DNA of 58,269 nt, taken from the NCBI RefSeq assembly GCF_001194135.2, contig NC_068992.1:61343496-61401764 (forward strand), read 5' to 3'. The position numbers and the translations under genes were made by a program. The DNA comes from Octopus bimaculoides. Lineage: Eukaryota. Shown in pieces: positions 6,485 through 38,361 of the stretch (within the stretch, counting starts at the first letter, position 1; each line of letters begins with the position of its first letter). Under the pieces are notes generated by a model. It saw only the letters and a program-made list of their open reading frames with translations. It did not search any database and had not been told where the DNA came from.

Positions 6485-9400
6485 GGTGGTGGCGATGGTG
6501 AGTACATAGTGAAAATTAATTTGTTTTAATTGAACTAAGTTTTTTTATATCACATATCACTTAATGCATGCACATCCCAAACTTGCCATCCGCTTTAGAA
6601 AGAAACCAGTTTCCCGTTTGCCTGTCATATGCAATGACTATCAATAAATCATGAGGGCTATTCTTGCCTGAGCCTGTATTCGGCCATGTCAGCTATATGT
6701 TGGATTCTCAAGGGCTCGCAAATTATCTGATGTGAGAGTTAAAGTTATCAACACTGACAAACAAGGGAAAAGAAGAGGGAGAACTTACATGAAGAACATA
6801 GTCTGCAAAGAAGTATTGGATTGAAAGGTGTACGCAAATTGAAATGTGTATTGGCTCTGACTCATTGCCTTGGTTTATAAGTCACCTATGATGTGCTTTT
6901 CAGAGTATGCCATATTGCATTAAATTTTTACCCCCATGAAATTGTGATCCCTATATTTTACATATAAAGTAATTTTTTTTACTATAAAATTTTTGTTTTC
7001 TAGATATGAAATTGTGACCATATAAATTTTAAAATGAGAATTTATTTTCCTTTATGGGTAAAATGGAAAAATAAGAGTGAATATTCATTTTATGAGTGCT
7101 GTGTATTAAGTCTATAAAATTATGCACAAAGCGTATATATAAAGTGTATTAAGTAATCATATTCCAATTTCCTTCACTTTTCAATGAATAGCAGACGAAT
7201 GACTATCTTTTGATACAGACACAACACAGGCTATGCTTTCAGGCTTTTTGGATAAAGTTTTCAAGAATAACCGAATAAGTTTACCATTAATTCTGTGAAA
7301 TATTCACAGATTCCACTAGTTATTATTATTATTAAAAAGGCAAGCTGGTAGAATTGGTAGAGCACTGGAAAAAATATTTTGCAGTATTTCGTGATACTTT
7401 ACATTCTATGTTGAAGGATAAACTTTGCTTTTCATCCATCTTGGGTTAATAAAATGAAGAACTAGCCATCAGAAACTTCTTCACCAGAAATTGCTGATAT
7501 TGTGCCTAAATCAGAAAGCATTATTTTAGGCACTGAACAGACATTGGACAAAATACCTTGTAATGTTTGTTCCAGCTCTTCAAATTCCAGTGATGATGAT
7601 GATGAGGAGGAGAAGGAAGAGGAGAAAGGAAAAATGATGGGAGTAAGAGGAAGGGGAGAAGGAAGGAGAGGAGGCAGAGGAAGAGTAGGCAGCAGTGGCA
7701 GTAGTGGAGGAAGAAGCGGAAACAGAGGAAGAGAAAGATGCAAAGAAGAAGCAGAAGAGGAGGAGGAAATGACAATGAAGACAAAAGTGGTGATGGTGTT
7801 GTTAATGATAATGATGATGATGATGATGAACTGTTGCTGCTAATGATGATGATAGTGATGGTAATGATGTCAATGATGATGGTGATGATGATGATGATGA
7901 TGATGAGTACTTACCAATGCATTTGGTGTCTGGTTGAGATCCAGAACTGTGATTACAGTGAACGGAACTTTGCACTTATGATCAAATTTCCAAGGCTTAT
8001 CCATAATAGCTTTTACGTAGTATCTTACATATCCGGTTCCTCCTTCATATGACGATGGAATATTGTACGGAAGCATAAACTCAAAAGGATAGTGATGCTC
8101 TCCGCCATTCAATATCACTTGATTAGCTCCCATAACTGGACCTACAAGAATATGTGTGCATAATGAAGAAAATATTTATATTGGTACATAAATGTATGTG
8201 GATGTTTATGGTTACATGTTTTTAGGTATAGGCATGACAGTGTGGTTAAAAAGCAGCTTTGCAATCAGATGGCTTGGGGTTCAGTCCCACTGAGTAGCAC
8301 CTTGGGTAAGTGTCTTCAGTGGACAACCAAAGCATTGTGAGTGGGTTATACTGTCAAGGAATAATGCTTAACTACACCAAAATTCCAATTCTTCAGATGT
8401 TAAACAGTTATGTTCACTTTCATGGTTATAACCAAAAACACTTTTTACAGAAAAGCTAAAAAGTATTCTTATATGAGTTAATATGAAACCCTTTATGTGG
8501 ATACTAAAGTTGCTAGAAATGGCAACCAAATCTCATTTAAATCATGCCCTACTGTCTTAAGAAAGGAAAAACATACTGGATAATGTAGATGCAGTCCTGG
8601 ATGTACTATTTCTGGGGGAAAAAATGATGAGACAGTCATGGTTGGAATGCTTTTGCTCATTAATTTGTTTATTGAAGGCTGACCTGTGTCTAAATAACAA
8701 CAAAATATATATTTATAATTAAATAATATGGGAGAGGTTTACAAAAGAGAAAGGTTTGTGTGTGTGTGTGCATGGATGCATGTCTGTGTGAGTGTATTCG
8801 AACACATACAATGGGACCTTACCTGAGCCATAGAGGATGACAGTATAATCAAAATAGTTTTCATGGGCTGAGTAATGTCGTGTTGTGGTGCTTCTGTTTT
8901 TACCACTTCCAGTCGAATGCCTTTCTGTCCAATGGACACGAGATTCCCCTTTTAACTCCAGACGGACACCTAAGGAAGAAATCAGTGCAATATTTAATTA
9001 AAAATATAGTCCCACAAAAAGGTAGTGAGCTGGCAGAACCATTTACATACTTCACAGCATTTTCTAATACTATGTTCTGAGTTCAAATTCTGCCAAGGTT
9101 GACTTTGCTTTCATCCTTTTGGGGTTGATAAAATAAGTGTCAGTTGAACACTGGAGTCAATGTAATCAACTTGTTTCCTCTCCCAAAATTGCTGGCCTTG
9201 TGCCAAAATTTGAAACCTATATAATCCCACAATTACTAACCCACAAACATTCTTTTCCCACACTCTTCGAACAGTCACTGCTTCTCTAAATTTGTTACCT
9301 GTATACCACTCAATGCACTCACCTTTGCTTTTCTTTGTCACTCCTTTCGTTTCATTTGATCTACTAAATTAGGGTTAGGGTTCTACTAAATACTTTACCC

Positions 9401-12400
9401 AATCCTTGTACCCCTGTGCTACATGTATGTAATGTCTCAAACTTTCCTTATTTTATCTCCTACGGAAGTTCAAACTAGACATCAACTGAATTGTTCCCAC
9501 TACTATAGAAAGGTCTACCAGAGATGCAGACATTATCCTTACTCTGCAGACAAAAAAGAAAGAGAAAACAAAAAAGAGTGTGAAAATATTTATAAACTGC
9601 AACTGGGACAATGTATTAACATAGAAATTTAATGCACTTTGATAAAAACAAAATCCTTTTGGGGTTAAAACAACTCATTAACATTTCAAATGTTGAATAC
9701 TAAAATCTGCCTATCAACTCTCAATGGAATGTTGTTTTGTAAACCACCTAATTTTGTAAAATAGAAGTACAATTCACCATTTTATAAGTATGTCAGTACA
9801 TACATACATACATTTGAACATTCATTTCTCCATGCTTCATTGAGGTAAATTTTTCTACACACAGATGTTCTTCCTGTCACTAATCATCACATTTCCAAGC
9901 AACACACACACATAAGCATGAATGTGCATATTGATACAAACAGAAGGTAGGTTTGGTGAGATTGGAGAGATGCTTGAGTAAAAACAAATAGAAGTGTGCT
10001 GTGTGCAAGAGGTACGATGGAAGAGTGCTTCAGCCAGACATTCAGAGCCAAAGAATACACACACATATATATATACTTATATAAGATGTATATGCATATA
10101 TAGATAAACATACATGTACACCAACACACATACATTTGTATATACGTTCATATAGAAAACTTAGGATCCCTACATGCAATCCAATTCTCCCACTTTCTCC
10201 TTTCTCCCTCTCTTTCACACTCATTTATTACTGTTATTCATTCATTTATCTAATTTTGCCACAGTTTGGCTGACTGAATACTGTTGGTTATAGCTCTAGT
10301 TAAGAATGCAAATGTCCAATTCTATCTCTTTATTATTATTATTGTTGTTATTCTTTCACACTAGCAGCCAGAGTGTTTGCTGTTTTGTGTTGTTATTCAC
10401 CAAGCGGTTTGTTATGATGGCAAGTTAAATTCAATTGTTCAATTATGTTACTCTAAATCCTGAAAATTCCATCTCTTCATGTTTTGTCTTTGGTCAGCCT
10501 AACTCTGGACTTCCTCTCTCTCTCCCAGTTCCATTAACCACTTGCTTCTCCCAACATGACAACATGAAACCCCCCGCCATATAAATTAGCTCTATTTGGA
10601 TTCCCCTACCTCATATTTTAATATCTTGCTATATACAGTTAAAGTCAAAGAAGATGTTCAGATAAGCAACTTTGTTTCCAACCTAGCACACATCTAAAAA
10701 ACCTCTTTTCACAGTGCAAGTTAGGATTACTTTATCATTTCATTATCTATCTATGCACCCACAGTTTTGTCTTCCATGCCATATGTTAGAAAAACCTTAA
10801 GATCCCTACGTACAATCCAATTCACCCTCTCTCACACACTCATTTATTACTGTTATTCATTCATTTATCTAATTTTGTCACAGTTTGGCTGACCGAATAC
10901 TGTTGGTTATAGCTCTAGTTAAGAATGCAAATGTTCAATTCTATCTCATCATTATTATTATTGTTCTTGTTCTTGTTATTTTTTCACACCAGCAGCCAGA
11001 GTGTTTGCTGTTTTGTGGTGTGTTCACCCCCACCACCTATACCGGAAGTCTTTGCCGCTGACCTCTATTGGATGACTTTCTCCTAAACACCTCCAATGGC
11101 TTAAATGCTCCCCCATCCCTACTTAGTGTTTATCTTCTATGGAATGTAGCTGGTCTCAAAGTTTCCTGACCCAGGATGAGTGTTAGACTCATCACTTTAA
11201 GCCAGAGACAAAGAGACCATCCATCCAATGGACACATCTCTCTTTACCTGCTCAAAAAAAACAAAAAAAAACAAGGTCATTTCATCTGCAGGAAAGATGA
11301 TGGCCTCGGTTATTTGGTATGCAAAAGGCATTGTACTTATTGACTACCTTCAAAAGGGCCACATCACCAATGGAGAACACTATGCCAACTTGCTGAGGTA
11401 GTTACCAAATGCTCAGGAAGACTGGCAAAAGGGGTCTTCTTTCATCATGACAATGCTCCAACACACATGTTCTTGGTTTCAATGGCTGCTATGCATGACT
11501 GTAGCTTCGATGTAGATGATCACCATCCCTATTCTCCTGATTTGATCCCATCTGATTATCATTTGTTCATGAACATGTAAAACACATGGTTGGGGACCAG
11601 TATTGCAGTGATGATGACATCATATCTTATCTTAATGACTGTTTTGGCCAACAGAATGAAAGCTTCTTCACCAGTGGCATCTAAGCACTGCAACACTGTT
11701 GCTAGAAGTGCGTGGACCGCAAGTGGGGACTAGGTTGAAAAATAAACCTCATTTGGTCACATTCCATGAGAGTATTTTTGTCAGCCTATAAATTTTTCAT
11801 TCAAACCTCATATTTATTGTATGGCCAACCTCAAAAGAAACCTCACACCACTGATATATATATATATATATGTGTATATATATATATATATACACATACA
11901 TTTATATATTTACACACATATACATACATATATATATGTATGTATAAAGGTAAGGTTATTTATTTTATTTTTATACTAACTCAATAATACTAATTCAAGT
12001 ATTATAATTACAACTGTGTTCTGCACAATCTACGTGCATTAGACAATACAGAGCAATTTACCTCCTCAAAGATGAATCAGCTTACAAAAAGAAAGCAAAT
12101 GAAAAAATTAAACAGATATTCATTATGATATGATGATTACATACAAACTTTTGATTTGTCATTTGAAGAATGTTGGTTGTTCCAAAATTCAGACGTTGGT
12201 CTGCAGTCTTGCATATAAAATATGCTATGTTGTAGTCAACTGACCATATACAGAATATGCAAAATAAATCATCATTTATACATTGCAATAATAATAATAA
12301 AGAATTAGGGCACAAGCAAAGCTAACCTTTTATTCAATCCTTCATTGTAGATTACATAAAGCTATTGGTCTAACCTTTAAATCTATCCTATGTTCAGTTT

Positions 12401-13396
12401 CTGATTCAAAGTGGGATAACATTTTATCCATTTTGTAACAGGTTTTGTGTTTTATATCTATTATATCCATATTTATTCCAGTATGACTTTTTGTGTTGTA
12501 TCTATAATTAAGTGTGACTGACATTTATTGAATGGTATAGCATTGTTGCTTTTTTTCCTGGTAGTAGAGTAGTAAAATCCATTTTTATAGTATCCTGTGA
12601 TCCCACGGTTGTCTTACCATAAATATCAATGTTCACACTGGACAGAGAGAGAGAGAAAGAGAGAGAGCCTATTTTTCTTTTCATCTAAAAAATAATTTAT
12701 CATGTCACACATTCAACACTTCAAAGATGTCCACCAGGTAAGCTAGAGTTAGCTGAAAGCCTTCAGACTGGAACTTGTCATGGAAATCTGCCTCCTGCTG
12801 CAAATCTAGAGTTATTGCTGCTATTGTAGTTCATAAAGCCATCTAAGTATGTTCCCCTTTGATAGCCATTGTACATTCGTGTGAAAAAGCAATGATTCAT
12901 GTTCAGATTCCTTATCTATACATAACAGTTTGAAAACACAACTGTTTAAGGCCCTGCCTTGAACAAAGTTGACAACCTTGATAGCCATGTTCAGGACATA
13001 TCTCATTTCAGTAGGTAAGGTTCTGGATGCTGAGGATTCATAATGAAGTATGCAGTGTGTACCTACAACGGATAGATTTCTTTTTCTTTCATCCTAGAAA
13101 TGAATCCAGACTGCAGACCAAGCATGGCTGGGGTTCCATCAGTGCACATCTCTACCAGCAAATCCCACAAAAGTTGTTTTTCTGAAAAAAGTTTGATACC
13201 CCACGAAAAATAGCTGCTGCTGCTGTACAACTATCCATAGGGTGACAGAACAACATTTCCTTTTCTACACAGTTGCCTGACACAAAACAAGTATATACCA
13301 GTAGCTGAGAACACTGAGCGATGTCAGTCGTTTGTGTATGTATCAGGTACATGCATAAAAAAGGGGATGTCCCACTAGACATACTGAGTTGTCTTA

Positions 13397-13448
<52 letters not shown>

Positions 13449-14122
13449 ATACATAGTCTAATATATAAATCTCATTCTGTCCGGTTTTTTTTTGTGCACT
13501 TATAACTTGAGTATTGTTCATCTGATCACGCTGAAATTTTAAACATGGATACATGAGAGAGCGGAGCGTTCCGTAATCTAAAAAGATTTTCAAAATTGTC
13601 AGTTTCAAAGTGAGAATTGCTATTTTTGTAATGCTTGTCTGTCCATTGGATAATTAAAACTTACATTTTTATTTTTATTCGAAACTAATGTTATGTATCC
13701 CATTATTCTTACCATTACATCAGTGAAAATCGAAATAAAATACTTAAAGCAACAGTTATCAAATGCAAAAGCTGAAGAACTGTTAATTGTTTATTTGGAG
13801 ATAAAACAGCTTTCAGTCTGGCATATAGGTGTCAACATGAAGTATGCTTCAGTGCAAAATGTTTAAGGTTATTTATGATTTCTATGGGTGGATGCTCTTC
13901 CTGTTGCCAGCTCTCACTTGTTTCCAAATAATGTAATATTTTGACATGGCTCTGTCATGATTACCTGAAAGACTGGAAATGAAACAAATTGTTTTTATGA
14001 TGGTGATACTTGCTTACAACTATCAAGTGATATCAAGGAGAGAAGACAGTAACATACATACTATGTATGTATGCATCTAACAATCTATATACATATATAT
14101 ACATATATATATATACATATAC

Positions 14123-14162
<40 letters not shown>

Positions 14163-14556
14163 NNNNNNNNNNNNNNNNNNNNNNNNNNNNNNNNNNNNNN
14201 NNNNNNNNNNNNNNNNNNNNNNNNNNNNNNNNNNNNNNNNNNNNNNNNNNNNNNNNNNNNNNNNNNNNNNNNNNNNNNNNNNNNNNNNNNNNNNNNNNNN
14301 NNNNNNNNNNNNNNNNNNNNNNNNNNNNNNNNNNNNNNNNNNNNNNNNNNNNNNNNNNNNNNNNNNNNNNNNNNNNNNNNNNNNNNNNNNNNNNNNNNNN
14401 NNNNNNNNNNNNNNNNNNNNNNNNNNNNNNNNNNNNNNNNNNNNNNNNNNNNNNNNNNNNNNNNNNNNNNNNNNNNNNNNNNNNNNNNNNNNNNNNNNNN
14501 NNNNNNAGCGATGGAGTGCCAACAACAACATATACATATATATATATATATAAGCT

Positions 14557-14601
<45 letters not shown>

Positions 14602-15226
14602 GTCATCCCATAAAAAATGCATTTTTTCAATTGCATGAACTAAAAGTTGGAGGAGGATGGGATAAACTATATAAACTACTTGCTTCAACTTGCTATAAAA
14701 ACAGGTAGTTATTCTACCTTATTCTTAGTGTCAGTTTTGAAGAGTTCAGTTCGATTTTAACAGTTATTTTTCAAAGCTATAATGGAAGTGACAAAGGAGT
14801 ATATTTGGGATATTTTGCTTTATTAGTTCAATAAGGGAAGCAATGCAACGGAAAGTGTAAGGAATATTAATGCAGTATTTGGGGATGGGCAATAAGCATA
14901 GGCCAGTGTCAACGGTGATTCCAGAAATTCTGAGCCAGAAACTACAGCTTAGAAGATGAGTCTCATCCTGGTAGATCTGTAGAGATCGACAGGGACGGTA
15001 TCGATTACAATTATAAAGAAACCGTATAGATTACGATTATAAAGAAATTTGTGGGGAAAATCTTTTCCGAGGGGGTGGGGAGAGAACTTGGGAACATTGA
15101 CAAGATCCGATATTTTTCCCTCGTAACTTTGAGGAAAGTATAATTCCTTTGAAATCACAAATTAGGCTTTTCCTCAGGAACTTAGATGCTAAACATCCCT
15201 TTGACGGGTTCGGGTCCTTACTTCTA

Positions 15227-15268
<42 letters not shown>

Positions 15269-18200
15269 ATAGAAGCAAGGACCCGAATCCTTCAATGGGA
15301 TGTTTAGCATCCAAGTTCCTGAGGATTATATTTTCCACAAAGTTACGAGGGAAAAACATCGGATCTTGTGAATTTTCTGAAGGCCTCTCCCCACCCCTGT
15401 TGCTTTCTGGGCATTTTTATTTCCATATTCGTTTCCTACATCTTTTTTTTTTTTTACACCCGTTGAACTATTTTTTTTTTCTGGATTTTGTTTCCAGGTA
15501 ATAATGTCAACATTAACCCATTTTTTTTTACACTTATACTTTCTTTTTTGTTTTGGTGGCCGGGTGTTAAACTAGATAACCGTTTGTTGTTGATAAGTTT
15601 TGTCCTTTGAACCAGGCTTGTCTTCATAATCCTCCTGGTTCGTGTTAGCAAATGGCTTACGATATATCTTTATGGTGAAGCACTCAACACAGATTTCACA
15701 AATACACACAATAAAATACTAGTTAAGGAAAGACTAAAAGACTATTAATAGACAAAGAAGCAGTCATGTAGAGAGAGAGGGAAGAGTCGTTAGTTATACA
15801 ATTAGATAGATGAATCTATCGATAATAAGCTTCGTTGAACAACGAAACGAGGATTACGATCAGAAGAGAAAGACAGTAGGAAGAATGATATATTTAATCA
15901 TTCCTCCCCACTTTTATTTTAAATATTTTATTCATATCACATATTCTTTTCTGTAACTGAATCTGGAATCTGGCCAAATCAAAACAAACAAATACTGTGC
16001 ATGTTTGCATTTTATTCAACATTTAAATACATATATAAAGTTGGGAGCATATTTTGTTCTCAGTTCATCTCATTTGCTAGTTAATACATTTAATCGGTGT
16101 TACCTTCCTGTTAATAAAACTACAAGAAAATTAGTTGTTTGAGAGCTCTCCAATAATCTCTAAAATATATATATTTTTTAATATCCTACATTGACGAGTG
16201 GCATTCTTTTTGCGAAGTTACCTCGTGACTTCGCCTTAATTAAGAATAATACTAGAAGACATCAAAAAGTAGATGAATACCCGAGCTAATGAGGAAACCT
16301 TCACGTGGTTAGAAGACCTATGAGAAACAACAACCAATTCTCACTCAATTCATATTCTATCGTCTTAATGAAAGCAAAAATATTTGATAATGTAGTCCAA
16401 TATATATATAAGACATAAATGGCTTTTCTGTTTTCGAGTATAGAACTGTTGACACATGCAATAAAGTGCCTTTGTCAGTTAATAGCTGCTAGGACATTTT
16501 AGTGTTTCAAAACTTCAGTGCTTTTCAAAATTCACCAACACTACTCCTGACATGCCTATGCAACCTTTCCTATGTATGGCTCTTTTACTGTTCATTTTTC
16601 TGTCTTTTTGTGTTTTATCTGTGTATCCTGTATGCATTTTTGGCTATCATTGATGCTTTTCTTTGCTTGATTTATTGAGGCTTTCTGTTTCCTCTTTTAC
16701 CCTTTTTCCGACAAGCTGTACCTGAGCATTATATATTATAAGCTCATAATTATTAACACTTTTCAAGGCGGTGAGCTGGCAGATTCGTTAGCATGCCCAG
16801 CAAAATGCTTAGCAGCATTTTGTCCATCTTTTCGATCGGTCCAGCTTGTCTCCTTTTTCTGAGTCGATAAAATAAGTACCAGTCGAGTAATGGCTCGATG
16901 TAATTGATTAGTCCCCTCCCCCCCGACCTTTCAGGCCTTGTACCAAAACCTGAAACCATTATTGTTAACGCTGCCAAGGCAACGAGGTAGGAAAATCATT
17001 TAAACGTCGGTCAAAATACTTAACGATATTTAATCTGGCTTTATGTTCTGAGCTCAAATCCCACCGAGGTTGACTTTGTCTTTCGTGGTCGATAGAATAA
17101 AGTACCAGTGAAGTAATGGAACCGATGTATTTGATTTTTCCGTCTCCCTACAAAACTGCCGGCTTTGTTCCAAAATTAGAAAGAATTATTGTTGACTCCT
17201 CGCAGAACTCGTCTGGCACTCTCCACTCTTTGCAACAAAAAATCGGTTAGCTTATACGACTTCGTCGTAAAGCATTCGCCGATAAAAATATGGAACAGCA
17301 CCAAGTCAGAATACAAACACAAACCCGTCAGCGACAAGATGTATCAAATTTTGAATGACAAAACAGAACAAGTTGTTTCCACTCTCATTTACATGACACC
17401 CATTTTATGCTACGTAGTTTCTTAAGCACAAAATTATTTCAATTAACATATTAATCTTATCAAATTTTAAAATAGGACAAGACAAGAGAATAATAAAATG
17501 GTTAAGACGATACCACAGCGAAAATTTGATACGGTAATGTGTGTATAGGAGCCCATATATCTAGCGCCTACAGGCGATCTTTCGTTTTCCCTACAGGAAG
17601 ATTGCCATTTACATGTTCTTTATGGTACAATGCCAAGACAAACTAAATCAGTTTGTTTAAAAGAGCACTAACCCAATTCAATGAGATAACACCAATAGCA
17701 TAAGACCCTATTTGTAGAAGAGCAAGTACCCACACATTAGATCAGTTTCATACACACGCGTAAATGAGAAAGTACTGCTCAATATTAGTTGTAGAGGATA
17801 TAGTTTTAACTAAAACTGAATCCGAGAATTTGTCTTGTGACTCGAGTTTCACGCCGCTATGATCTTCAGATTAGAGATGGTAGTGGCATGAACCTCGAGA
17901 CGCGAGCCAAAGTTTCAGTGTTGATTAAAAAATAATACTACGTATGAGTGCATTTGTCTGTATGTATATATCAGGTCATCCCATAAGTTCTGTCCGAATT
18001 TTGAATAAAGAAAACACGTGATCAAATGTTATATTTAATTGAAATTTAAACATCAGCGTACTTTCCCTGATTACCTATGACTTCCTTCCATCTATTTACA
18101 AGCTTTTTAATCCCATCAATGTAAAACTCTTTTGGTTTCAAAGCGAAGAACTTTGAAATGTCAGTTTCCACCTCCTCCTGGCTTGCGAAAGTTATGTCCC

Positions 18201-20512
18201 CCAAATGATTCTGTAAACTATGAAACAAATGGTCGTCTGAAGGAACAAGGTTGGAAAAATAAGATGGATGAGGAATTTTTCCCAACCAAGCTNNNNNNNN
18301 NNNNNNNNNNNNNNNNNNNNNNNNNNNNNNTGGGGTGGTGCATTGTCTTGATGAAACATCACTCCGTTTCGATTCACTAAAGCGGATTTTTTTTTTCTTT
18401 AAAGCTCGGTTCAAACGTTCTAATTGCTGACAGTAGACTTGAGCATTGATTGTTGCATTAGGTGGTAACAATTCAAAGTGAATTACTCCTTTGCAATCCC
18501 ACCAGATAGAGAGAAGAACCTTTTCCACATGAAGTTCCCTTCTCGGTTGTGGTTGAGCTTTTTCCTTTTTACCAAGTCACTGTTTACAACGTTTAACATT
18601 TCGATAGAAGATTCATTTTTCGTCACCAGTCAATCCAAAAAGGGTGAAATGAGTTCGCGAGAATGGAGAGAAGAGCAGATGCTAACTCGGGATTTGCGGT
18701 TGCTTTTAGACAATTCATGAGGCACCCATTTTCCAAGTTTAGGAACCTTTCCAAGTTGTTGTATATGACGATGAGAAAGTTCTTTCATTCAAGCATTTTT
18801 TCCCATAAACTAAGTGTATGTTTCGAGTCGCTTCGGCTGCAGAGTTTCCTTTTTTGTACTCATAAAGCATTATGTGCCTTAAATGCTCTTTGGATACTTC
18901 CATGTTAGAAAGGGTTTTAATCAAAGAAATTTTAATTCTATTATTCTGTAAAATAATATTTAATTAGTTTAAATGTACACAAATGCATAAAAATAAATTT
19001 TAATTCCATTAGACTTTCTAAAATACTATTAAATTTCATTCAATTTTAAAAAAGGTAAAATCGGAAAGAACTTATGGGATGAATTGATATGTATATCTAT
19101 GTATGTATATATAAATGTGTGTGTGTAAATTAGGGAATCCTTCATAGAGTAACTGCTGCATTTGTTGAGTATATAAAAAGTTTGGTTGCTTGTTTCTCTG
19201 AAACCGTCAGAATGATGAGAACCCAATCGAAAATCGATTAAGGCTGGTCATCATTTTTTTCAGTCTGCAGAGAAATGGCTAAAATTTGATCTATTTATAA
19301 TTTTACCATATGTTTTATATATATATATATATATATATAAGAATGAAGATCTTTTCTGGAGGATATAGACTAAAAGGGTTGGTTTCTGCAGAGATCTACT
19401 TTTCCTTTTATCCTTTTGGGGTTGATAAAATAAATACCATCTGAGCAGTGGGTGGATGTAATCGACTGGCTCCCGACCCACAAAATTTCAGGCTTGCGCC
19501 TATAGTAGGGAAAAGGGCGATCTTTCGATATGAGAACTGTGTTTATGACTTCTTAAAGCACGTGTATTTGTTTATGTTTCTGAAGAAGATTGTCGCTTTC
19601 AGTAAATTTATTTTTTATTTTTTGACATATGTGGGGTGAGGGGAAAGGGGATCTTTTGAAGTCGGCGTGAAAGCAAAAGAGACTGAGAGAGCGCGATTGG
19701 ATCAGGGAAGTTCTTTTGAAGTGGGCGTGCCGTGTGTGTGTGTGTGTGTGNNNNNNNNNNNNNNNNNNNNNNNNNNNNNNNNNNNNNNNNNNNNNNNNNN
19801 NNNNNNNNNNNNNNNNNNNNNNNNNNNNNNNNNNNNNNNNNNNNNNNNNNNNNNNNNNNNNNNNNNNNNNNNNNNNNNNNNNNNNNNNNNNNNNNNNNNN
19901 NNNNNNNNNNNNNNNNNNNNNNNNNNNNNNNNNNNNNNNNNNNNNNNNNNNNNNNNNNNNNNNNNNNNNNNNNNNNNNNNNNNNNNNNNNNNNNNNNNNN
20001 NNNNNNNNNNNNNNNNNNNNNNNNNNNNNNNNNNNNNNNNNNNNNNNNNNNNNNNNNNNNNNNNNNNNNNNNNNNNNNNNNNNNNNNNNNNNNNNNNNNN
20101 NATTTCATTGAAAGATATACCAATTCCATCTAACGATACTTACCTAGTATTATTACTACAGAAAACTAATGACCTAATCAAAAGAATGAGATGGAAGGCA
20201 TTCTTTTACGATTTTATTCTTTTAACTTTAGGTTTCTTTATATTTTATATTTTAGAATTTATAATATTCATGCTTATTTACACATAAATTTTTATACGCA
20301 TATATATTTAAACATATATTTATCTATTTTTAGATTTTTATATGTATCGATATTTATATTCCGTATTTTTATGTTTTAAACTTTTAAATTTATTATGCTA
20401 CCATGTTATGTTGGATGTATATCTTTTGAAATACTAAATATTGATTTGCTAAATATATTATTGACGAATTAATAATATAAAATCACATATATACACACAC
20501 ACACACACATAT

Positions 20513-20549
<37 letters not shown>

Positions 20550-23500
20550 TACACACACACATCTATGTGTGTATACATACACACATACATATATAGAGAA
20601 CCTCTCTCTCTAACTCACATACACACATACCAGCAACATTACTCTGTGTCTCTTCACATACAAACCACACCTTCTGTCTCGCACACCCCCATCTAACACA
20701 CTCACACAGCACGCCACATATACACCTGACGAAGACATAAAAGAATTAGTTCATACATTAAACTTGATTTGCTTCAAGTTGAACGGAACTAAGAAACATA
20801 CAAAAGAGAGTAAATAGAGCTGGGGGTGACGAGAAGAAATGAAACTCAGCTGTCTATGAATAACTGGTTATATAAAACATTGGGTTAAAAAAACTAACTA
20901 CACAGAAATTAGATATTAGCGGCAGAAAAGAAAAAAACCCAGCAACATAAAATTCGGCAGAATTCTAGTTTCATATAACCGAACGTAACTTTTTTTGTCA
21001 ATTTTCAGTTTTTGCAAATTTGTGTTCTAAACACCGGAATTCATACGATTATCCAGAAATGTTTTTGATAACCCTCCACCCCTTCCCTCATAAATCCTAA
21101 AATTTCCACTCTTTTTCGAATGTTTATAAATCAGAGTATTTAATACGGACATTCCAAATTATTTGCTTAAATCTCACTCTTGGCTGCATCATCATTCCGT
21201 TCAATGTGTTTATGGAGAAGAAAATATTGAAAAACAGCAATACATGTCAGAGAGATAAAGAAACGAGGAAGGTAGTCGTGAGATATACTAAAAATAACAG
21301 CTAAATAACACACATCTTTTTCTTTTTTTTGCATAATTGTACGCATTCCTGTGAAGAACACAAATTCGTAAAAAAAAGATAATTTTTCAGATTAACACCC
21401 GCACGATCTTCGCTGGGGTGTTAGGGTTAGGGTTTTAGGGTCGGGGTTAGGGTTAGGGTTTTAGGGTTAGGGTTTAGGGTTACGGTTACGGTTTTAGGGT
21501 TTGGATTAGGGAATTCTGTCCCTAACCGTAACCCTAACCTTAAACACTAATCCTAACCCTAAAACTCTAACCCTAACACCCTAGTGAAGATCGTGCGGGA
21601 GTAATCTGAAAAATTACCAAAAAAATTCTGAAAATTCCAAAAATGAAAAAAAAAAAAAACTTGTTTGCTATCCAAAATACATCATGCAACAAAACAAACC
21701 GCAGAAGAGCGTCAAGTGAACAAAAAAAAGGCAAAAACAAAAAAGTTCTGTAGCGTAGCTAAAGTTTGATAACGTGAAAGCGACCCACTAAAATTGACAA
21801 TTAAGCTTACAGGCGTCAATGGTTGCAATATTGACTCCGCAATTTCATGTTACACAGTACTTACAAAGAAATGAAATAAAATATATATATATATTGGAAG
21901 TTTTTAAAAATCGATAGAAAAGGAAAGAGAGAGCGGGAGAGAGTGCGTGTTTGAAAGGAGAGAAAAGTGATTACAAGTACAGGAGAGAGAGAGAGAGGAG
22001 TTGGGTGAATAAAATTGCGTGATTAACAGTTGGATGAATAAAAAGAAAAAGAGATGAACGGATGAATTATGCCATGAAAGGGAGACAGGCAATTTGTAGG
22101 AGCGACAAGAAAATAAATAAACGAGAGCCCAGAGTCAGAGAAGAGAGTCAGCTTATGGGAGAAAATAAGAGATAGATGGACCGAATGACACGAAAAGGCT
22201 GTCATCTAAAACTAAAAATAAGGGAAAAGATGCATAAAAACGAGAGAAAGATATAGTTTGTTTAGCTCGGTTCCTAGGAATTCAATAGACATCAGATCCA
22301 CTTAGACGCAAGTGATATCTCTAATAATAATAATAATAATAATAATGGTGGTGGTGACGTTTTCTTCATTAATCGCTAAAGGCTGACAAATACATCGGGA
22401 ACGGTGCTGGACGTTTATACTTTAGAATTAGAGAAGAGTATGTGAAAATGGGAGAAATGAAAAAAATAAATAAATAAATACATAATTCGAACAATAAGTT
22501 ATTTCTTACCCAAATTAAAATAAAGGTAGAGATGGACTATATGTAATCTGAACCTTTCCCCCCCCCCTTATTTATTAATTTTTTTTTACGGAATCCCACG
22601 TTTTAGGCTATGGAGATTCCGATTCTGAAAAAAAAAATTTTGAAAAATTTCAATCCCCCCCCCACCAAGCAGGCTATTTACATGCTAGAAATAACAGCCA
22701 AATCTCACAAAACTAGTGTTAGGGTTAGGTTTAGGGTTAGGGCTAGGGTTAGGGTCAGGGTTAGGGTTAGGGTCAGGGTTACGGTCAGGGTTAGGGTTAG
22801 GGTTAGGGTTTGAGTTAGGGTTAGGTTTACCCTGTGGATCTATATAAAAACCGGGGCGGGGGGATCGAAATTTTGAAATTGAGATTTTTGAAAATTTTTT
22901 TCCACAATCGGATTCTCCATGGTCTGCAACATAGGATTCCGTAAAAAAAAACAAAATTTAAAAGTGGGGGTATACCCAGATTACATATACTCCATCTCCA
23001 CCCAAATAAACTTAATAGTAAATAAGAACGAGGAAGCCTCAAAGTTAGAGGTTGCAAACGTGGCGGTGTTCGCACCTCATAAGGGTGCGACTACCAGAGA
23101 AAGTATACAAAGTTGCTTTCGAAAATAAAATTAACTTTCTCTTTAAAATAATCTTGTTTTTGTGTACGAGTTCTAGAAAATTTTTGTATAAATGCGAAGA
23201 ATGTGGAGCATAGACAATATTGGAAATTACTGATCTACATAATCGTTCGGTCTGCTAAAAATAGTTGCTACATCTCTCTTAAATTATGACTCATGTACTT
23301 TAAGAGGAGACGCAAAATTACATAAGTTCCTCATACCTCAAATGCAAAAAAAAAAAAATGACAGGACGATCACGTTTGGAATAAATTAGGCCAAAGGACA
23401 AACTCGGTAAATATCAACCTGGAGTTAAACAACAGCTCAAAAACTGTTTCTAGCATATAACAGCTTGATAGTAAACAGCAAGACAAAGTAAACTTACATA

Positions 23501-23694
23501 TAGATAAAATTAACAAAATAATAAATTAAAAGGTTTATAAAATATTTTCAAAGTAATTTTTTCCTCTCTAACTTACCTCGCACTTTCATGGGTTCATTCA
23601 GCACAATTTGTACAAATCCATTCAACCTCTGACCACCGTAATAAACTCGCGATGGATTGTTAAAATGGATCGCTAGACTTCTTAGCTTCCCCAT
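665..23694 (-). CDS. ARRDC: Arrestin domain-containing protein (alpha-arrestin, ARRDC/TXNIP family); six coding exons visible, 3' end outside the window
   Basis: Hand-spliced join(23577..23694, 8823..8969, 7915..8141, 5834..6016, 3751..3933, 665..887) gives one open frame of 360 codons +1 nt with GT-AG introns and matching phases. Contains alpha-arrestin motifs: VYYGGQRLNG, VHWTE, HYSAHENYF, YPFEFMLPYNIPSSYEG, GYVRYYVKA, KPWKFDH, SGPLSAHV, RTGYVSGE, IPPLPPS, LPMEIIIGTIPL. Family call only; the exact orthologue is not determined. Confidence 0.95.
1010..1555 (-). repeat. Interspersed ~500 bp repeat; inverted partner at about 3100-3560
   Basis: Reverse complement aligns to 3100-3560 (shared CTCTCATGGCTTTTGATCTTAA, GCTTAATACCACAG, TTTGAATAATTCACC, GGACCTTTTGAGC). 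Confidence 0.8.
1580..1790 (+). mobile_element. SINE family 2 (GAGCTGGCAGAA...CTGAGTTCAAATTC...GGGGTCGATAAAATAAGTACCAG...GATGTAATCGAC)
   Basis: Same sequence recurs more than 12 times, e.g. about 2232-2430, 7335-7520, 9020-9230, 16765-17180, 27760-28320, 36060-36235, 41130-41310(-), 49020-49180(-), 56170-56330(-), 57760-57895(-). Confidence 0.8.
1977..2649 (+). repeat. Local direct duplication of ~160 bp (1977-2136 and 2491-2649)
   Basis: ATAGATGAATAGGAGAGGGCTCTTACCCTAGAGGTCAGAGC...CCACTCTCT occurs twice with few mismatches, separated by a SINE. Confidence 0.85.
3100..3560 (+). repeat. Interspersed repeat, inverted partner of 1010-1555
   Basis: Alignment by eye to the reverse complement of 1010-1555. 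Confidence 0.8.
3751..3933 (-). CDS. ARRDC: ARRDC-like coding exon 5 (VISFHATTKTK...IPPLPPSHLIYCNIIDIRYILT)
   Basis: Acceptor CAG ending at 3934, donor GTAAGT from 3750; 183 nt, phase 0-0; arrestin-C motif IPPLPPS...CNIIDIRY. Confidence 0.93.
3971..4208 (-). mobile_element. Non-autonomous Helitron-like 3' end (hairpin plus CTAG/T)
   Basis: Minus strand ends CTGTGAAATATTCACAG (hairpin)-GTCTTG-CTAG-T, matching the Helitron 3' signature; homologous to 7093-7325. Confidence 0.6.
5029..5520 (-). mobile_element. RTE-clade LINE, 3' ORF remnant
   Basis: REKLGIRGIK..MQERRMLWFGHVMH..GSCIKKC..LKVDDTCGRQRPRKT is the typical RTE C-terminus; paralogous pieces at 50.7-51.3 kb and 53.3-54.7 kb. Confidence 0.85.
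5834..6016 (-). CDS. ARRDC: ARRDC-like coding exon 4 (QPIQQQGTKHFCCCCCKSGPLSAHVNLYRTGYVSGEKILINAEICNMSNRDITSSKASLDM)
   Basis: Acceptor AG at 6018-6017, donor GTGAGT from 5833; 183 nt, phase 0-0. Confidence 0.95.
7093..7325 (+). mobile_element. Non-autonomous Helitron-like 3' end, inverted relative to 3971-4208
   Basis: CTGTGAAATATTCACAG hairpin then ATTCCA-CTAG(7316-7319)-T; about 235 bp alignable to the reverse complement of 3971-4208. Confidence 0.6.
7590..7906. repeat. Purine-rich and (GAT)n low-complexity tract in ARRDC intron 3
   Basis: GAT/GAG/GAA triplet runs; explains the overlapping low-complexity ORFs here. Confidence 0.9.
7915..8141 (-). CDS. ARRDC: ARRDC-like coding exon 3 (PVMGANQVILNGGEHHYPFEFMLPYNIPSSYEGGTGYVRYYVKAIMDKPWKFDHKCKVPFTVITVLDLNQTPNAL)
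   Basis: Acceptor AG at 8143-8142, donor GTAAGT from 7914; 227 nt, phase 1-0; arrestin-N signature LPSSYEG..G.VRY. Confidence 0.97.
8823..8969 (-). CDS. ARRDC: ARRDC-like coding exon 2 (GVRLELKGESRVHWTERHSTGSGKNRSTTTRHYSAHENYFDYTVILYGS)
   Basis: Acceptor TTCTTCCTTAG ending at 8970, donor GTAAGG from 8822; 147 nt, phase 1-1. Not in the ORF track in this frame because it has no start codon. Confidence 0.95.
9323..9543 (-). other. Candidate non-coding/poison cassette exon in ARRDC intron 1
   Basis: Long polypyrimidine tract plus GTCTGCAG acceptor (AG at 9545-9544); AAG|GTGAGT donor at 9323/9322; 221 nt. Splicing after exon 1 gives GAG TAA. No transcript evidence. Confidence 0.4.
10153..11020 (+). 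repeat. Local direct duplication of ~235 bp (10153-10392 and 10787-11020)
   Basis: CTCATTTATTACTGTTATTCATTCATTTATCTAATTTTG...GCAGCCAGAGTGTTTGCTGTTTTGTG occurs twice. Confidence 0.85.
11230..11810 (+). mobile_element. Tc1/mariner transposase remnant (C-terminal half)
   Basis: Degenerate DYLQKGHITNGEHYANLL, GVFFHHDNAPTH and HHPYSPDLIPSDYHLF motifs; related copy at about 42640-43135. Confidence 0.85.
12720..13345 (-). mobile_element. hAT (Charlie/ZBED5-8-like) transposase remnant
   Basis: VLNMAIKVVNFVQGRALNSCVFKLLC..ESEHESLLFHTNVQWLSKG and LFCHPMDSCTAAAAIF match hAT transposase motifs (LL.HT.VRWLS.G). Absent from the duplicated copy. Confidence 0.85.
14163..14506. other. Assembly gap (N run)
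   Basis: Other N runs at 18293-18330, 19751-20100, 24298-24307, 37922-37948, 45488-45667, 49520-49529, 50549-50558, 52494-52503 and 55954-56030. Confidence 1.
14598..15060 (+). mobile_element. mariner 5' remnant (TIR plus N-terminal HTH)
   Basis: GGTCATCCCATAA TIR core shared with the element at 17971; ATG at 14782 gives MEVTKEYIWDILLY*FNKGSNATESVRNINAVFGD. Confidence 0.8.
15100..15369. repeat. Foldback: ~100-125 bp inverted arms around a (TG)n loop
   Basis: 15100-15226 is the reverse complement of 15270-15369 apart from one internal indel. Confidence 0.9.
17971..19087 (-). mobile_element. Near-complete mariner (Tc1/mariner) DNA transposon with TIRs and TA TSD, defective
   Basis: TIRs TCAGGTCATCCCATAAGTTCTGTCCG and TCAATTCATCCCATAAGTTCTTTCCG, flanked by TA on both sides. 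ORF pieces MEVSKEHLRHIMLYEYKKGNSAAEATRNI, KVLLSIWWDCKGVIHFELL, FHQDNA, PSDDHLF and GIKKLVNRWKEVI; frameshifted, 1117 bp. Confidence 0.95.
20101..20900 (+). mobile_element. Penelope-like element remnant (ORF N-terminus and AT-rich terminal region)
   Basis: SLKDIPIPSNDTYLVLLLQKTNDLIKRMRWKAFFY resembles the N-terminus of invertebrate Penelope-like ORFs (recalled pattern, not searched). Confidence 0.55.
21380..21616. mobile_element. Palindromic MITE-like element with head-to-head (TTAGGG)n/(CCCTAA)n
   Basis: Left TAATTTTTCAGATTAACACCCGCACGATCTTCGCTGGGGTGTTAGGG pairs with the right end CCCTAACACCCTAGTGAAGATCGTGCGGGAGTAATCTGAAAAATTA. Confidence 0.85.
21660..22260 (-). repeat. Interspersed CT-rich repeat; diverged inverted copy at about 28400-29050
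   Basis: Shared CCGTCCATCTATCTCTTATTTTCTC, CAACTGTTAATCACGCAATTTTATTCAC and AAGCTTA blocks. Confidence 0.75.
22495..23030. mobile_element. Foldback element with ~165 bp imperfect TIRs and a central (GGGTTA)n array
   Basis: 22495-22660 is the imperfect reverse complement of 22860-23030 (TACGGAATCC...ATGGAGA.TCCGATT...); degenerate TTAGGG array at about 22720-22830. Confidence 0.8.
23577..23694 (-). CDS. ARRDC: ARRDC-like coding exon 1 (MGKLRSLAIHFNNPSRVYYGGQRLNGFVQIVLNEPMKVR)
   Basis: ATG at 23694-23692, donor GAG|GTAAGT at 23577/23576; 118 nt, phase 1 matches exon 2. Typical alpha-arrestin N-terminus. Too short for the ORF track. Confidence 0.93.
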
Positions 23695-27740: not shown

Positions 27741-28536
27741 TCTTCTGCTGAGGTTGACTTTGCCTTTCATCATTTTGGGTTTGATAAAATAAGTATCGGT
27801 TGAGTACTGGAGTCGATGTGATCGACTGTTCCATTCCCCATAAAATTCAGACCATGTACCTATAGTAGAAAGGATTATTATTATTATTATTCGAAGGCAG
27901 TGAGTGACAGAATTGTCAGCATGCCAGGCAATAGCTGTATTTCACTCATTGCTCTGATTTGAGTTCAAATTCTGCCGAGGTTGACTTTACCTTTCATCCT
28001 TTCAGGGTCGATGAAATAAGTACCAGCTGAAGACTGGGGTTGATGTAATCAACTCATCTCCACCTCCCCCAGGCTGCACCTGTGACAAAAATTTGAAATA
28101 ATAATAAGTATAGTTATTATCATTTTAAGGCAGTGAGCTGGCAGAACTGTTAGTGTGCCGGACAAAATCTCTACATTCTGAGTTCAGATTCTGCCAAGTT
28201 CGATTTTGCCTTTCATCCTTTCAGGGTTGATAAATTAAGTACCAGTCGAGTTCTGGTGTCGATGTAATCGACTTAACCACTCCCCACAAATTTTAGGCCT
28301 CGTGCCTTGAGTACAAAGGATTATTATCATTATTATTCTAAAAGATAGCACTTGTGGACCTGGTGCCTATAAAATTCGTAGAAACTGAGCATTTTTATAT
28401 TTTTTACCTACTTGTTTTTTTATGTGACACCCTTTTTTCGTGTCATTCCGTCCATCTATCTCTTATTTTCTCTCATTGCCTGTCTCTCTATCTCTCTGTC
28501 TTTCTTTCTCTATCTCTCTGTCTTTCTCTCTCTCTT

Positions 28537-28580
<44 letters not shown>

Positions 28581-28701
28581 GTTTTTATTCTCTTGTTGCT
28601 CTTACGAATTGCCTGCCTCTCTTTCACAACCCAATTCATCTGTTCATCTCTTTTTCCTTATTCACCCAACTGTTAATCACGCAATTTTATTCACTAACTT
28701 C

Positions 28702-28753
<52 letters not shown>

Positions 28754-30700: not shown

Positions 30701-30884
30701 TATGTGGCTCAGGAGTTATGAAAATGTTCGAATACATTTCTAACTTTCATTTTCAGTAAACCGGTCAATGAAAAGTTTGTTTTCTAAAATTTAGGATAAA
30801 TGTAAACAAGCAATATTTAATTTGTAATGTGCTATTTTGTTTTTGGATAAATCTTGTAAGTCTGTGCTAAAAGTTTCGGTAAAT

Positions 30885-33520: not shown

Positions 33521-33530
33521 GTCACGTGAC
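33521..33530. promoter_or_regulatory. Palindromic E-box GTCACGTGAC with nearby CCAAT boxes
   Basis: 10-bp palindrome; ATTGG at 33465-33469 and CCAAT at 33484-33488. Motif only. Confidence 0.3.
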
Positions 33531-35956: not shown

Positions 35957-35989
<33 letters not shown>

Positions 35990-36009
35990 CATCATCATTA
36001 TCCTTATCA

Positions 36010-36043
<34 letters not shown>

Positions 36044-36830: not shown

Positions 36831-36879
36831 GCTGGGTTAGATTAATTTTATTTATAAAATCTGAGAGACCTTCACCATT

Positions 36880-38349: not shown

Positions 38350-38361
38350 ATTATTATGATT

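What the first reader, a model, noticed from the sequence alone, without database searches (positions are those of the whole stretch)
8970..9560. Inverted conservation: intron-1 segment nearly identical between paralogues while exon 2 is about 70% identical
9111-9341 and 40989-41219 differ at only about 2-3 of 231 nt (the two ORF-track translations differ by one residue), and near-identity extends to about 9555/40775. The adjacent exon 2 matches at about 92 of 130 nt by hand count, and other intronic blocks look about 70-90% by eye. This needs either recent gene conversion between the inverted arms, with a boundary near the broken acceptor, or strong selection on a non-coding element kept in both copies.
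Basis: partly seen in the sequence, partly recalled or inferred. Interest (0 to 1): 0.7.

Follow-up and report, generated by a model that had tools for sequence, protein, structure and literature searches.

The report
Gene-conversion tract between octopus arrestin-gene copies
A 585-base stretch of an octopus arrestin-family gene's first intron was recently copied over a decayed partial duplicate 32 kb away, which is ordinary gene conversion and not a conserved functional element.

Summary
Window 9111-9341 and 41219-40989 match at 228/231 nt. The core 9072-9556 is 97.1% identical between arms, with a 150-nt perfect run. Exon 2 matches at 93/129 (72%), and sequence outside 8972-9817 at 78.6%.

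The window is Octopus bimaculoides. Gene g1 is an arrestin-domain (ARRDC) gene on the minus strand, and the segment lies at the 3' end of its 14.6-kb intron 1. The partner arm is not a full paralogue. It is an intergenic partial copy holding only a dead exon 2. The true head-to-head paralogue g2 starts just past the window end.

In the flanks, informative sites group sequences by copy type (52 against 6). In the core they group the two O. bimaculoides copies together (11 against 0; P = 7e-9). Both copies also share a derived 20-bp deletion. Between species the core is 92.3% identical, which equals the intronic baseline (92.4%, 39th percentile). Strong selection is therefore rejected.

The tract carries g1-type states, so g1 was the donor. 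It ends at two indels, one of which removes the acceptor of the dead exon. A second tract lies at 12293-12545. This is an ordinary process and of low interest.

The parts
8972..9556 (.). Copy of the conversion tract in arm 1, the inferred donor. It is the 3'-most 585 bp of intron 1 of gene g1.
   Evidence: Alignments and identity. Species-grouping sites and g1-type states.
40773..41358 (.). Copy of the conversion tract in arm 2, the inferred acceptor. It carries g1-type sequence set inside g2-type flanks.
   Evidence: Over 8972-9556 arm 2 is 92-94% identical to O. sinensis g1 and 56-88% to O. sinensis g2. In the left flank these figures are 74% and 87%.
9072..9556 (.). Core of the tract. It is 97.1% identical between arms and holds a 150-nt perfect run at 9198-9347.
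   Evidence: Informative sites: 11 species-type, 0 copy-type.
9022..9071 (.). Dip in identity (74%). It is a cluster of 13 changes private to O. bimaculoides g1. Arm 2 still matches O. sinensis g1 here at 94%.
8958..8971 (.). Left edge of the tract. These 14 bp (the AG acceptor and the first bases of exon 2) are present in g1 and in all O. sinensis and O. vulgaris copies, and are deleted only in arm 2.
40735..40772 (.). Right edge of the tract. These 38 bp are present in arm 2 (in g2-type form), in O. sinensis g1 and g2 and in O. vulgaris g1. They are deleted only in O. bimaculoides g1, between 9556 and 9557.
9019..9225 (+). Old, decayed SINE-like dispersed repeat that lies inside the tract. 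It predates the duplication and has at least 12 other copies in the window.
8825..8969 (-). Functional exon 2 of g1, part of the Arrestin_N domain.
   Evidence: The exon model matches P0003 at 100%.
41361..41490 (+). Dead copy of exon 2 in arm 2. It has no AG acceptor, a TGA at the Trp codon and frameshifts.
   Evidence: It carries 20 private changes in 129 nt.
23575..23694 (-). Coding part of exon 1 of g1. Intron 1 runs from 8970 to 23574.
8395..22343 (.). Arm 1 of the old inverted duplication. It covers a little of intron 2, exon 2 and most of intron 1 of g1.
   Evidence: Collinear inverted BLAST chain.
28320..41972 (.). Arm 2, an intergenic partial copy upstream of g1. It has no copy of exon 1 or of exons 3-6.
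12293..12545 (.). Second conversion island, arm 1 copy. It is 96.1% identical to arm 2 and only 90.6% to O. sinensis g1 (92.5% to O. vulgaris g1).
38088..38340 (.). Second conversion island, arm 2 copy. It is bounded by a microsatellite and by a 7-bp indel, and an N gap lies close by at 37922-37948.
51591..57942 (+). Upstream flank of the true head-to-head paralogue g2. The first exon of g2 should lie just beyond the window end.
   Evidence: Collinear 85-95% matches to L003 2338-9386.

Best explanation
The near-identical segment is an interlocus (non-allelic) gene-conversion tract.

The window comes from Octopus bimaculoides. It holds g1, an arrestin-domain (ARRDC) gene on the minus strand. 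Upstream of g1 lies an old inverted partial copy (arm 2) of its intron 1 and exon 2. Outside the tract, arm 2 resembles the neighbouring paralogue g2.

After O. bimaculoides split from the O. sinensis/O. vulgaris lineage, a 585-bp piece of g1 intron 1 (8972-9556) was copied non-reciprocally over the matching piece of arm 2 (41358-40773). The most likely route is repair of a break in arm 2 using g1 as the template. This mechanism is inferred, not shown.

The tract stops at two small indels that interrupt homology. One is the 14-bp deletion that removed the acceptor of the dead exon in arm 2. The other is a 38-bp indel on the other side. Since the event each copy has gained a few private substitutions, mostly transitions and many at CpG sites. 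Counting those changes places the event at roughly 40% of the time back to the species split. This date is an inference.

The segment evolves at the neutral rate between species, so nothing indicates a function. The same gene cluster shows other tracts in this and in related species, so this is one episode of continuing mosaic concerted evolution.
For: 1. Local identity is 97.1% in the core against 78.6% outside 8972-9817, with a 150-nt perfect run. No column shuffle out of 10,000 reached that run.

2. The species and the gene are identified. The exon 1-6 model matches UniRef protein P0003 of O. bimaculoides at 100%, and that protein carries Arrestin_N and Arrestin_C domains.

3. Tree discordance is sharp. 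Using O. bimaculoides g1, arm 2, O. sinensis g1 and O. sinensis g2, informative sites support copy type: species grouping as follows. Region 8400-8755 gives 27:2, 8757-8824 gives 5:0, exon 2 gives 6:1, 9558-9640 gives 10:0 and 9641-9770 gives 4:3. The core 9072-9556 gives 0:11. Fisher's exact test gives P = 6.8e-9.

4. Both O. bimaculoides copies share derived states that are absent from O. sinensis g1, O. sinensis g2 and O. vulgaris g1. These include an identical 20-bp deletion after 9269.

5. There is no constraint. O. bimaculoides g1 against O. sinensis g1 is 92.3% identical in the core, against a non-exonic baseline of 92.4%. Windows of 485 columns average 92.3% with sd 1.9, which puts the core at the 39th percentile. 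Three indels of 20, 6 and 14 bp separate the species inside the core.

6. Donor polarity can be read. In the core the O. bimaculoides copies match O. sinensis g1 at 32 diagnostic sites and O. sinensis g2 at 10. The flanks of arm 2 are g2-type.

7. The process recurs. A second island at 12293-12545 shows the same pattern. O. vulgaris g1 carries a g2-type 7-bp insertion there. O. sinensis g1 and g2 are themselves a mosaic, 97.7% identical over 2.9 kb and 78-82% elsewhere.

8. The non-SINE part of the tract occurs once per copy in about 210 kb of sampled sequence, so it is not a dispersed repeat.
Against: No reads were available, so a chimeric assembly of arm 2 cannot be formally excluded. The scaffold contains N gaps, although none lies within 8300-10100 or 40100-42100.

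The arm 2 region of O. sinensis falls in an unsampled 22.9-kb gap, and O. bimaculoides g2 lies outside the window. Both the date and the assumption that arm 2 was g2-type in the tract before the event therefore rest on its flanks.

O. sinensis g1 and g2 are also unusually similar in this segment (90% against 74-76% in the flanks). I read this as an older conversion, but it could hint at a locally lower mutation rate.

I found no GC-biased signature.

The 74% dip needs a separate later event in g1, and that event is unexplained.
Confidence: 0.86

Rival explanations
1. The segment is a functional non-coding element kept nearly identical in both copies by strong purifying selection. Candidates are an enhancer, a non-coding RNA, or a cryptic or poison exon.
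For: On the minus strand a polypyrimidine tract plus CAG lies at about 9545-9575, and an AAG|GTGAGT donor-like site lies at about 9322-9330. Both are retained in all five sequences. O. sinensis g1 and g2 are also more alike here than in their flanks.
Against: Orthologue identity in the core (92.3%) equals the neutral intronic baseline, at the 39th percentile. Three indels of 20, 6 and 14 bp separate the species inside it. No site groups the sequences by copy type, which long-term constraint since the duplication would produce. Rfam gives no match. Predicted folds are less stable than shuffled sequence, z = +1.4 and +0.9. About 150 nt of the core is a SINE fragment that is 14.5% diverged from its consensus, like the other copies in the window. 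The candidate exon would bring in an immediate in-frame stop, and no annotated isoform uses it.
Confidence: 0.03
2. The near-identity is an assembly artefact. Reads from g1 intron 1 were used to build or gap-fill the arm 2 copy in a short-read scaffold.
For: The window contains ten runs of N. One of them, at 37922-37948, lies next to the second high-identity island.
Against: No N run lies within either copy of the tract. The copies differ at 14 substitutions and one 1-bp indel in the core. Judged against the O. sinensis outgroup, both carry private changes (4 in g1, 8 in arm 2), which a chimera would not produce. The tract edges coincide with real lineage-specific indels. Similar mosaic tracts occur in independently assembled chromosome-level genomes of O. 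sinensis and O. vulgaris.
Confidence: 0.05
3. Arm 2 was chimeric from the start. It was built by template switching from g2-type and g1-type pieces, and was not converted later.
For: Arm 2 is a mosaic of g2-type flanks and a g1-type tract.
Against: The tract differs from O. bimaculoides g1 by only 2.9%. The flanks differ from O. sinensis g2 by 13% or more, and the dead exon carries 15% private changes. The g1-type piece is therefore much younger than the rest of arm 2. The tract also carries substitutions that arose on the O. bimaculoides g1 lineage after the species split.
Confidence: 0.04
4. The tract is a young transposable element that inserted independently into both arms.
For: Positions 9019-9225 belong to a SINE-like family with at least 12 other copies in the window.
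Against: The SINE fragment is old: it has 19 shared derived changes and a shared internal deletion, and it is present in every O. sinensis and O. vulgaris copy. The remaining 331 bp occur only once per gene copy. Both flanks align in register, with no displaced target sequence.
Confidence: 0.01

Closest known systems
Interlocus (non-allelic) gene conversion causing mosaic concerted evolution of duplicated genes, as in primate globin genes, CYP21A2/CYP21A1P, and the arms of sex-chromosome palindromes (my own knowledge)
   Same: A short non-reciprocal tract of 585 bp lies between diverged duplicates on one chromosome. Paralogues group by species inside the tract and by copy type outside it. The tract ends at breaks in homology. 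A functional gene exchanges sequence with a pseudogene-like copy. The arms are inverted, as in palindromes.
   Different: The transfer runs from the functional gene's intron into a dead intergenic copy, so no phenotypic effect is expected. The surrounding arms are only about 70-80% identical, whereas actively homogenised palindromes exceed 99%. Conversion survives here only in islands. No GC bias was detected.
Conserved or ultraconserved non-coding elements
   Same: A long non-coding stretch, including a 150-nt perfect run, is almost identical between two copies although the neighbouring exon has diverged.
   Different: Conserved elements are defined by conservation between orthologues. Here the orthologue identity equals the neutral baseline, and indels are tolerated.
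Walsh-type model of escape from conversion, in which sequence divergence and indels progressively shut down conversion between duplicates (my own knowledge)
   Same: Islands that are still similar keep converting, while the flanks, broken up by indels and transposable-element insertions, have diverged to 70-80%. O. sinensis g1 and g2 are also unusually similar in the same segment.
   Different: The model was not tested quantitatively here. That the islands reinforce themselves is an inference.

Membership tests
Interlocus gene-conversion tract | Paralogue identity rises locally and abruptly, well beyond chance relative to the flanks | tested here: met
   97.1% in the core against 78.6% outside 8972-9817. 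The 150-nt perfect run was reached by 0 of 10,000 shuffles.
Interlocus gene-conversion tract | Tree discordance: paralogues cluster by species inside the tract and by copy type in the flanks | tested here: met
   Core: 11 species-type sites, 0 copy-type. Flanks: 52 copy-type, 6 species-type. Fisher P = 6.8e-9. Both copies share a derived 20-bp deletion.
Interlocus gene-conversion tract | The similarity is not explained by constraint, because orthologues evolve at the neutral rate in the tract | tested here: met
   Core 92.3% against an intronic baseline of 92.4%, at the 39th percentile.
Interlocus gene-conversion tract | Non-reciprocal transfer with an identifiable donor and acceptor | tested here: met
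   The tract matches O. sinensis g1 at 32 diagnostic sites and g2 at 10, while the flanks of arm 2 are g2-type. This rests on the flanks, because the pre-conversion state of arm 2 was not observed.
Interlocus gene-conversion tract | Tract length within the usual range for ectopic conversion, from tens of bp to a few kb | tested here: met
   585 bp, and about 250 bp for the second island. The usual range is from my own knowledge.
Interlocus gene-conversion tract | Both copies confirmed as separate loci by independent reads | not testable with these tools
   No read data were available. Indirect support comes from private changes in both copies.
Interlocus gene-conversion tract | GC-biased substitution pattern (a frequent but not defining feature) | tested here: inconclusive
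   In the SINE part, GC-to-AT against AT-to-GC changes are 12:6, similar to the other SINE copies. The tract is 37.7% GC against 27-35% in the intronic flanks.
Conserved non-coding element | Orthologue conservation above the neutral level and intolerance of indels | tested here: not met
   Identity is at baseline. Indels of 20, 6 and 14 bp separate the species.
Structured non-coding RNA | A match to a known RNA family, or a fold more stable than shuffled sequence | tested here: not met
   Rfam gives nothing in the tract at E <= 1. There is no tRNA. Fold z-scores are +1.43 and +0.87.
Independently inserted transposable element | Many dispersed copies of the whole unit, with insertion sites that differ between the arms | tested here: not met
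   Only 9019-9225 is dispersed. Positions 9226-9556 occur once per copy. The flanks are in register.
Arrestin-domain (ARRDC) gene (host gene g1) | Arrestin_N and Arrestin_C domains in the encoded protein | tested here: met
   P0003 scores Arrestin_N at 5e-38 and Arrestin_C at 3.7e-31. It matches the exon 1-6 model at 100%.

The most novel reading that the evidence does not exclude
The two islands (8972-9556 and 12293-12545) may be recurrent conversion hot spots shared by several Octopus species. They could be kept similar either because they hold a recombination-initiating sequence, or because a weakly selected element benefits from repeated homogenisation. One candidate element is the minus-strand cryptic exon, whose acceptor-like and donor-like sites are retained in all five sequences.
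Probability: 0.06. Interest if true: 0.4.

Novelty: new member of a known kind. Interest (0 to 1): 0.18.

Why it matters
The result explains the apparent paradox of an intron more conserved than its exon. The exon copy is dead and decaying, and the intron copy was recently overwritten. This stops the segment from being mistaken for a conserved regulatory element or an RNA gene.

It is a clean, datable example of intrachromosomal gene conversion in a cephalopod, with tract ends at indels. It also shows that the head-to-head ARRDC pair in Octopus evolves in a mosaic, concerted way in three species. Anyone building trees or calling orthologues for this family should keep that in mind.

A crossover between these inverted tracts would invert the first exon and promoter of g1. 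Only non-crossover outcomes are therefore expected to persist. This last point is an inference.

Tried and rejected
**RNA and structure**
- Rfam scan of 8300-10100 at E <= 1 gave only a sub-threshold SCARNA7 match at 8642-8853, outside the tract.
- ARAGORN found no tRNA.
- RNA folds of the core on both strands were less stable than shuffled sequence.
- The promoter and terminator scan uses bacterial consensus sequences and is not informative for a eukaryote.

**Searches for related sequence**
- The 76-aa ORF at 9111-9341 has no homologue in the protein collection, so it is a chance ORF.
- The exon 2 peptide alone found only two distant fragments. Their contig (L001) shares no intron sequence with the window.
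- An exact search of metagenome contigs for a 26-mer from the core found nothing.
- A literature search found no paper on this locus.

**Tests that could not decide**
- I used a SINE consensus built from 12 copies in the window as an outgroup, to separate constraint from conversion and to look for GC bias. The tract's SINE part is 14.5% from the consensus and the other copies are 14-34%. The GC-to-AT against AT-to-GC ratio was unremarkable. The test was uninformative.
- I tried to find arm 2 in O. sinensis. The 10-kb upstream flanks of L002 and L003 stop short of it, leaving 22.9 kb unsampled.

**Ideas rejected**
- Independent transposable-element insertion.
- A cassette exon in the tract. It would bring an in-frame stop, and O. 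vulgaris isoform X3 differs only in exon 3.
Full report
**1. The observation**

I aligned 8300-10100 with the reverse complement of 40100-42100.
- Window 9111-9341 matches 41219-40989 at 228/231 nt. The differences are at 9120, 9159 and 9197.
- The two ORF translations differ by one residue.
- Near-identity runs to 9556/40773.
- Exon 2 matches at 93/129 (72%).

The profile is a mosaic:

| Segment | Identity between arms |
|---|---|
| 8400-8755 | 81% |
| Exon 2 (8825-8969) | 72% |
| 8972-9021 | 96% |
| 9022-9071 | 74% |
| Core 9072-9556 | 97.1% (471/485) |
| 9558-9817 | 91% |
| 9818-10017 | 79% |

The longest perfect run is 150 nt (9198-9347). No column shuffle out of 10,000 reached it, and identity outside 8972-9817 is 78.6%. 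The 14 core substitutions are 11 transitions (6 at CpG sites) and 3 transversions. That is what young, neutral divergence looks like.

**2. What surrounds it**

The window is a eukaryotic scaffold. It is about 36% GC, has ten runs of N, and is rich in microsatellites and transposable elements.

A minus-strand gene, g1, has these exons:

| Exon | Coordinates |
|---|---|
| 1 | 23694-23575 |
| 2 | 8969-8825 |
| 3 | 8142-7915 |
| 4 | 6016-5831 |
| 5 | 3933-3751 |
| 6 | from 887 downwards |

Its exon 1-6 model matches UniRef protein P0003 of Octopus bimaculoides at 100%. That protein has Arrestin_N and Arrestin_C domains. The finding therefore lies at the 3' end of the 14.6-kb intron 1, right next to the exon 2 acceptor.

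Self-BLAST shows a collinear inverted duplication, 8395-22343 against 41972-28320, at a background of 68-82%.

Arm 2 holds only a dead exon 2 at 41361-41490. It has no AG acceptor, a TGA at the Trp codon and frameshifts. It has no copy of exon 1 or of exons 3-6.

Positions 9019-9225 are an old SINE-like repeat with at least 12 other copies in the window. The other 331 bp of the core occur only once per gene copy.

**3. Related loci**

The protein search returned three useful relatives, and I fetched the DNA around each.
- P0004 is the O. sinensis orthologue (92% identical). Its locus is L002.
- P0005 is an O. sinensis paralogue, g2 (82% identical). Its locus is L003.
- P0006 is an O. vulgaris isoform of g1. 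Its locus is L004.

In O. sinensis, g1 and g2 lie head to head, with their first exons 42.9 kb apart. Window 51.6-57.9 kb is collinear with the upstream flank of g2. The g2 gene of O. bimaculoides should therefore start just beyond the window end. Arm 2 is thus a third, intergenic, partial copy.

In its flanks arm 2 is g2-type. Over the equivalent of 8400-8755 it is 86.9% identical to O. sinensis g2 and 73.6% to O. sinensis g1. It also shares a 12-bp insertion with g2.

**4. The decisive test**

A five-way alignment gives these core identities:

| Pair | Core identity |
|---|---|
| O. bimaculoides g1 vs arm 2 | 97.1% |
| O. bimaculoides g1 vs O. sinensis g1 | 93.9% |
| Arm 2 vs O. sinensis g1 | 92.8% |
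| O. bimaculoides g1 vs O. sinensis g2 | 89.1% |
| Arm 2 vs O. sinensis g2 | 88.0% |

Four-taxon informative sites switch sharply at the tract edges:

| Region | Copy-type sites | Species-type sites |
|---|---|---|
| 8400-8755 | 27 | 2 |
| 8757-8824 | 5 | 0 |
| Exon 2 | 6 | 1 |
| Core 9072-9556 | 0 | 11 |
| 9558-9640 | 10 | 0 |
| 9641-9770 | 4 | 3 (one 3-nt cluster) |

Fisher's exact test for core against flanks gives P = 6.8e-9. Both O. bimaculoides copies share an identical 20-bp deletion and several substitutions that are absent from O. sinensis g1, O. sinensis g2 and O. vulgaris g1.

Across 12,395 aligned non-exonic columns, O. bimaculoides g1 against O. sinensis g1 is 92.4% identical. Windows of 485 columns average 92.3% (sd 1.9). 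On that BLAST-based alignment the core scores 92.3%, the 39th percentile; the MAFFT alignment gives 93.9%. Three indels of 20, 6 and 14 bp separate the species inside the core.

The segment is therefore not conserved between species. It was homogenised within O. bimaculoides after the split. That is gene conversion, not selection.

**5. Anatomy of the event**
- **Donor.** In the core the O. bimaculoides copies match O. sinensis g1 at 32 diagnostic sites and O. sinensis g2 at 10. The tract is g1-type, so g1 was the donor.
- **Extent.** Arm 2 is also g1-type across 8972-9071. The tract in arm 2 is therefore continuous, 41358-40773, or 585 bp.
- **Left edge.** This is a 14-bp deletion private to arm 2. 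It removes the acceptor and the first bases of the dead exon.
- **Right edge.** This is a 38-bp stretch deleted only in O. bimaculoides g1. Arm 2 keeps it, in g2-type form.
- **Shoulder.** The 91% stretch at 9558-9817 is not converted, because every informative difference in 9558-9640 is copy-type.
- **Dip.** The 74% stretch at 9022-9071 is a cluster of 13 changes private to O. bimaculoides g1. It postdates the conversion, and its cause is unknown.
- **Date.** Private changes number 4 in g1 and 8 in arm 2. Changes on the O. bimaculoides branch since the split number 15. This puts the event at roughly 40% of the time back to the split, which is an inference that assumes a clock.

**6. The process recurs**

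A second island at 12293-12545 is 96.1% identical between the arms. The g1 copy is 90.6% identical to O. sinensis g1 and the arm 2 copy 91.7% (92.5-92.6% to O. vulgaris g1). It has 10 species-type sites, and copy-type sites resume at a 7-bp indel.

In that island O. vulgaris g1 carries the g2-type insertion, and it is only 95% identical to O. sinensis g1, against about 99% elsewhere.

O. sinensis g1 and g2 are themselves a mosaic: 97.7% over 2.9 kb at the 3' end, blocks of 96%, and 78-82% elsewhere. Their exon 4 peptides are identical to each other but differ from O. bimaculoides g1 at 4 of 61 residues.

O. sinensis g1 and g2 are also 90% identical in the core segment, against 74-76% in its flanks. 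I read this as an older conversion at the same place.

**7. Rivals**
- **Selection on a non-coding element** is contradicted by sections 4 and 5. It also has no support from Rfam, tRNA or fold stability.
- **Assembly chimera** is unlikely. Both copies carry private changes when judged against the outgroup, and the tract edges are real lineage-specific indels. Without reads it cannot be excluded.
- **Independent transposable-element insertion** is excluded.
- **Chimeric origin of arm 2** does not fit. The tract is far younger than its flanks.

**8. Verdict**

This is a newly described instance of a well-known process, with no sign of function. Interest is low.

Noticed in passing
window 9022-9071: O. 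bimaculoides g1 carries a cluster of 13 changes in 47 bp (6 transitions, 7 transversions). Arm 2, O. sinensis g1 and O. vulgaris g1 all agree with one another here. The cluster lies in the head of the SINE. Four of the changed sites match O. sinensis g2, and several match the SINE consensus. It could be a short templated patch from g2 or from another SINE copy. The cause is unexplained.
   Followed up: partly
window 12293-12545 and 38088-38340: A second conversion island is 96.1% identical between the arms. It is bounded by a microsatellite and a 7-bp indel, and a 27-N gap lies next to it at 37922-37948. In this island O. vulgaris g1 carries the g2-type 7-bp insertion that O. sinensis g1 lacks.
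   Followed up: yes
window 51591-57942, and beyond the window end: This stretch is collinear with the upstream flank of the O. sinensis paralogue g2 (P0005). The true head-to-head ARRDC paralogue of O. bimaculoides should therefore start a few hundred bp past the window end. No O. bimaculoides g2 protein appeared in the protein search.
   Followed up: partly
L002 42044-44938 against L003 34065-36958 (O. sinensis): O. sinensis g1 and g2 are 97.7% identical over 2.9 kb at their 3' ends. Their exon 4 peptides are identical to each other but differ from O. bimaculoides g1. This looks like large-scale concerted evolution of coding sequence in that species.
   Followed up: partly
window 9322-9330 and 9545-9575, minus strand: A donor-like AAG|GTGAGT site and a strong polypyrimidine tract plus CAG bracket about 215 nt. 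Both are retained in all five aligned sequences. Spliced after exon 1, this stretch would give an immediate in-frame stop (GAG TAA). No annotated isoform uses it.
   Followed up: partly
window 9373-9386: A telomere-like TTAGGGTTAGGGTT lies inside the tract. It is present in the g1 copies of all three species and is degenerate in O. sinensis g2.
   Followed up: no
L003 about 21450-22030 (O. sinensis g2): O. sinensis g2 has a local tandem duplication of about 110 bp in the SINE-derived part of the segment. It also has a nested SINE insertion near the exon 2 acceptor.
   Followed up: no
window 18046-18528 (-), 56590-57123 (+), 27369-27773 (-), 48051-48416 (-): These are transposable-element remnants. 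One is a mariner-type transposase fragment (Pfam Transposase_1, 1.8e-19) interrupted by an N gap. One is a Pif1 2B-domain helicase fragment (6.2e-20), probably from a Helitron. Two further ORFs look like LINE and integrase fragments by eye but have no Pfam hit.
   Followed up: partly
window 27743-28340: Three tandem SINE copies and a LINE-like fragment sit where an exon 1 copy of arm 2 would be expected. They may have destroyed or replaced it.
   Followed up: no
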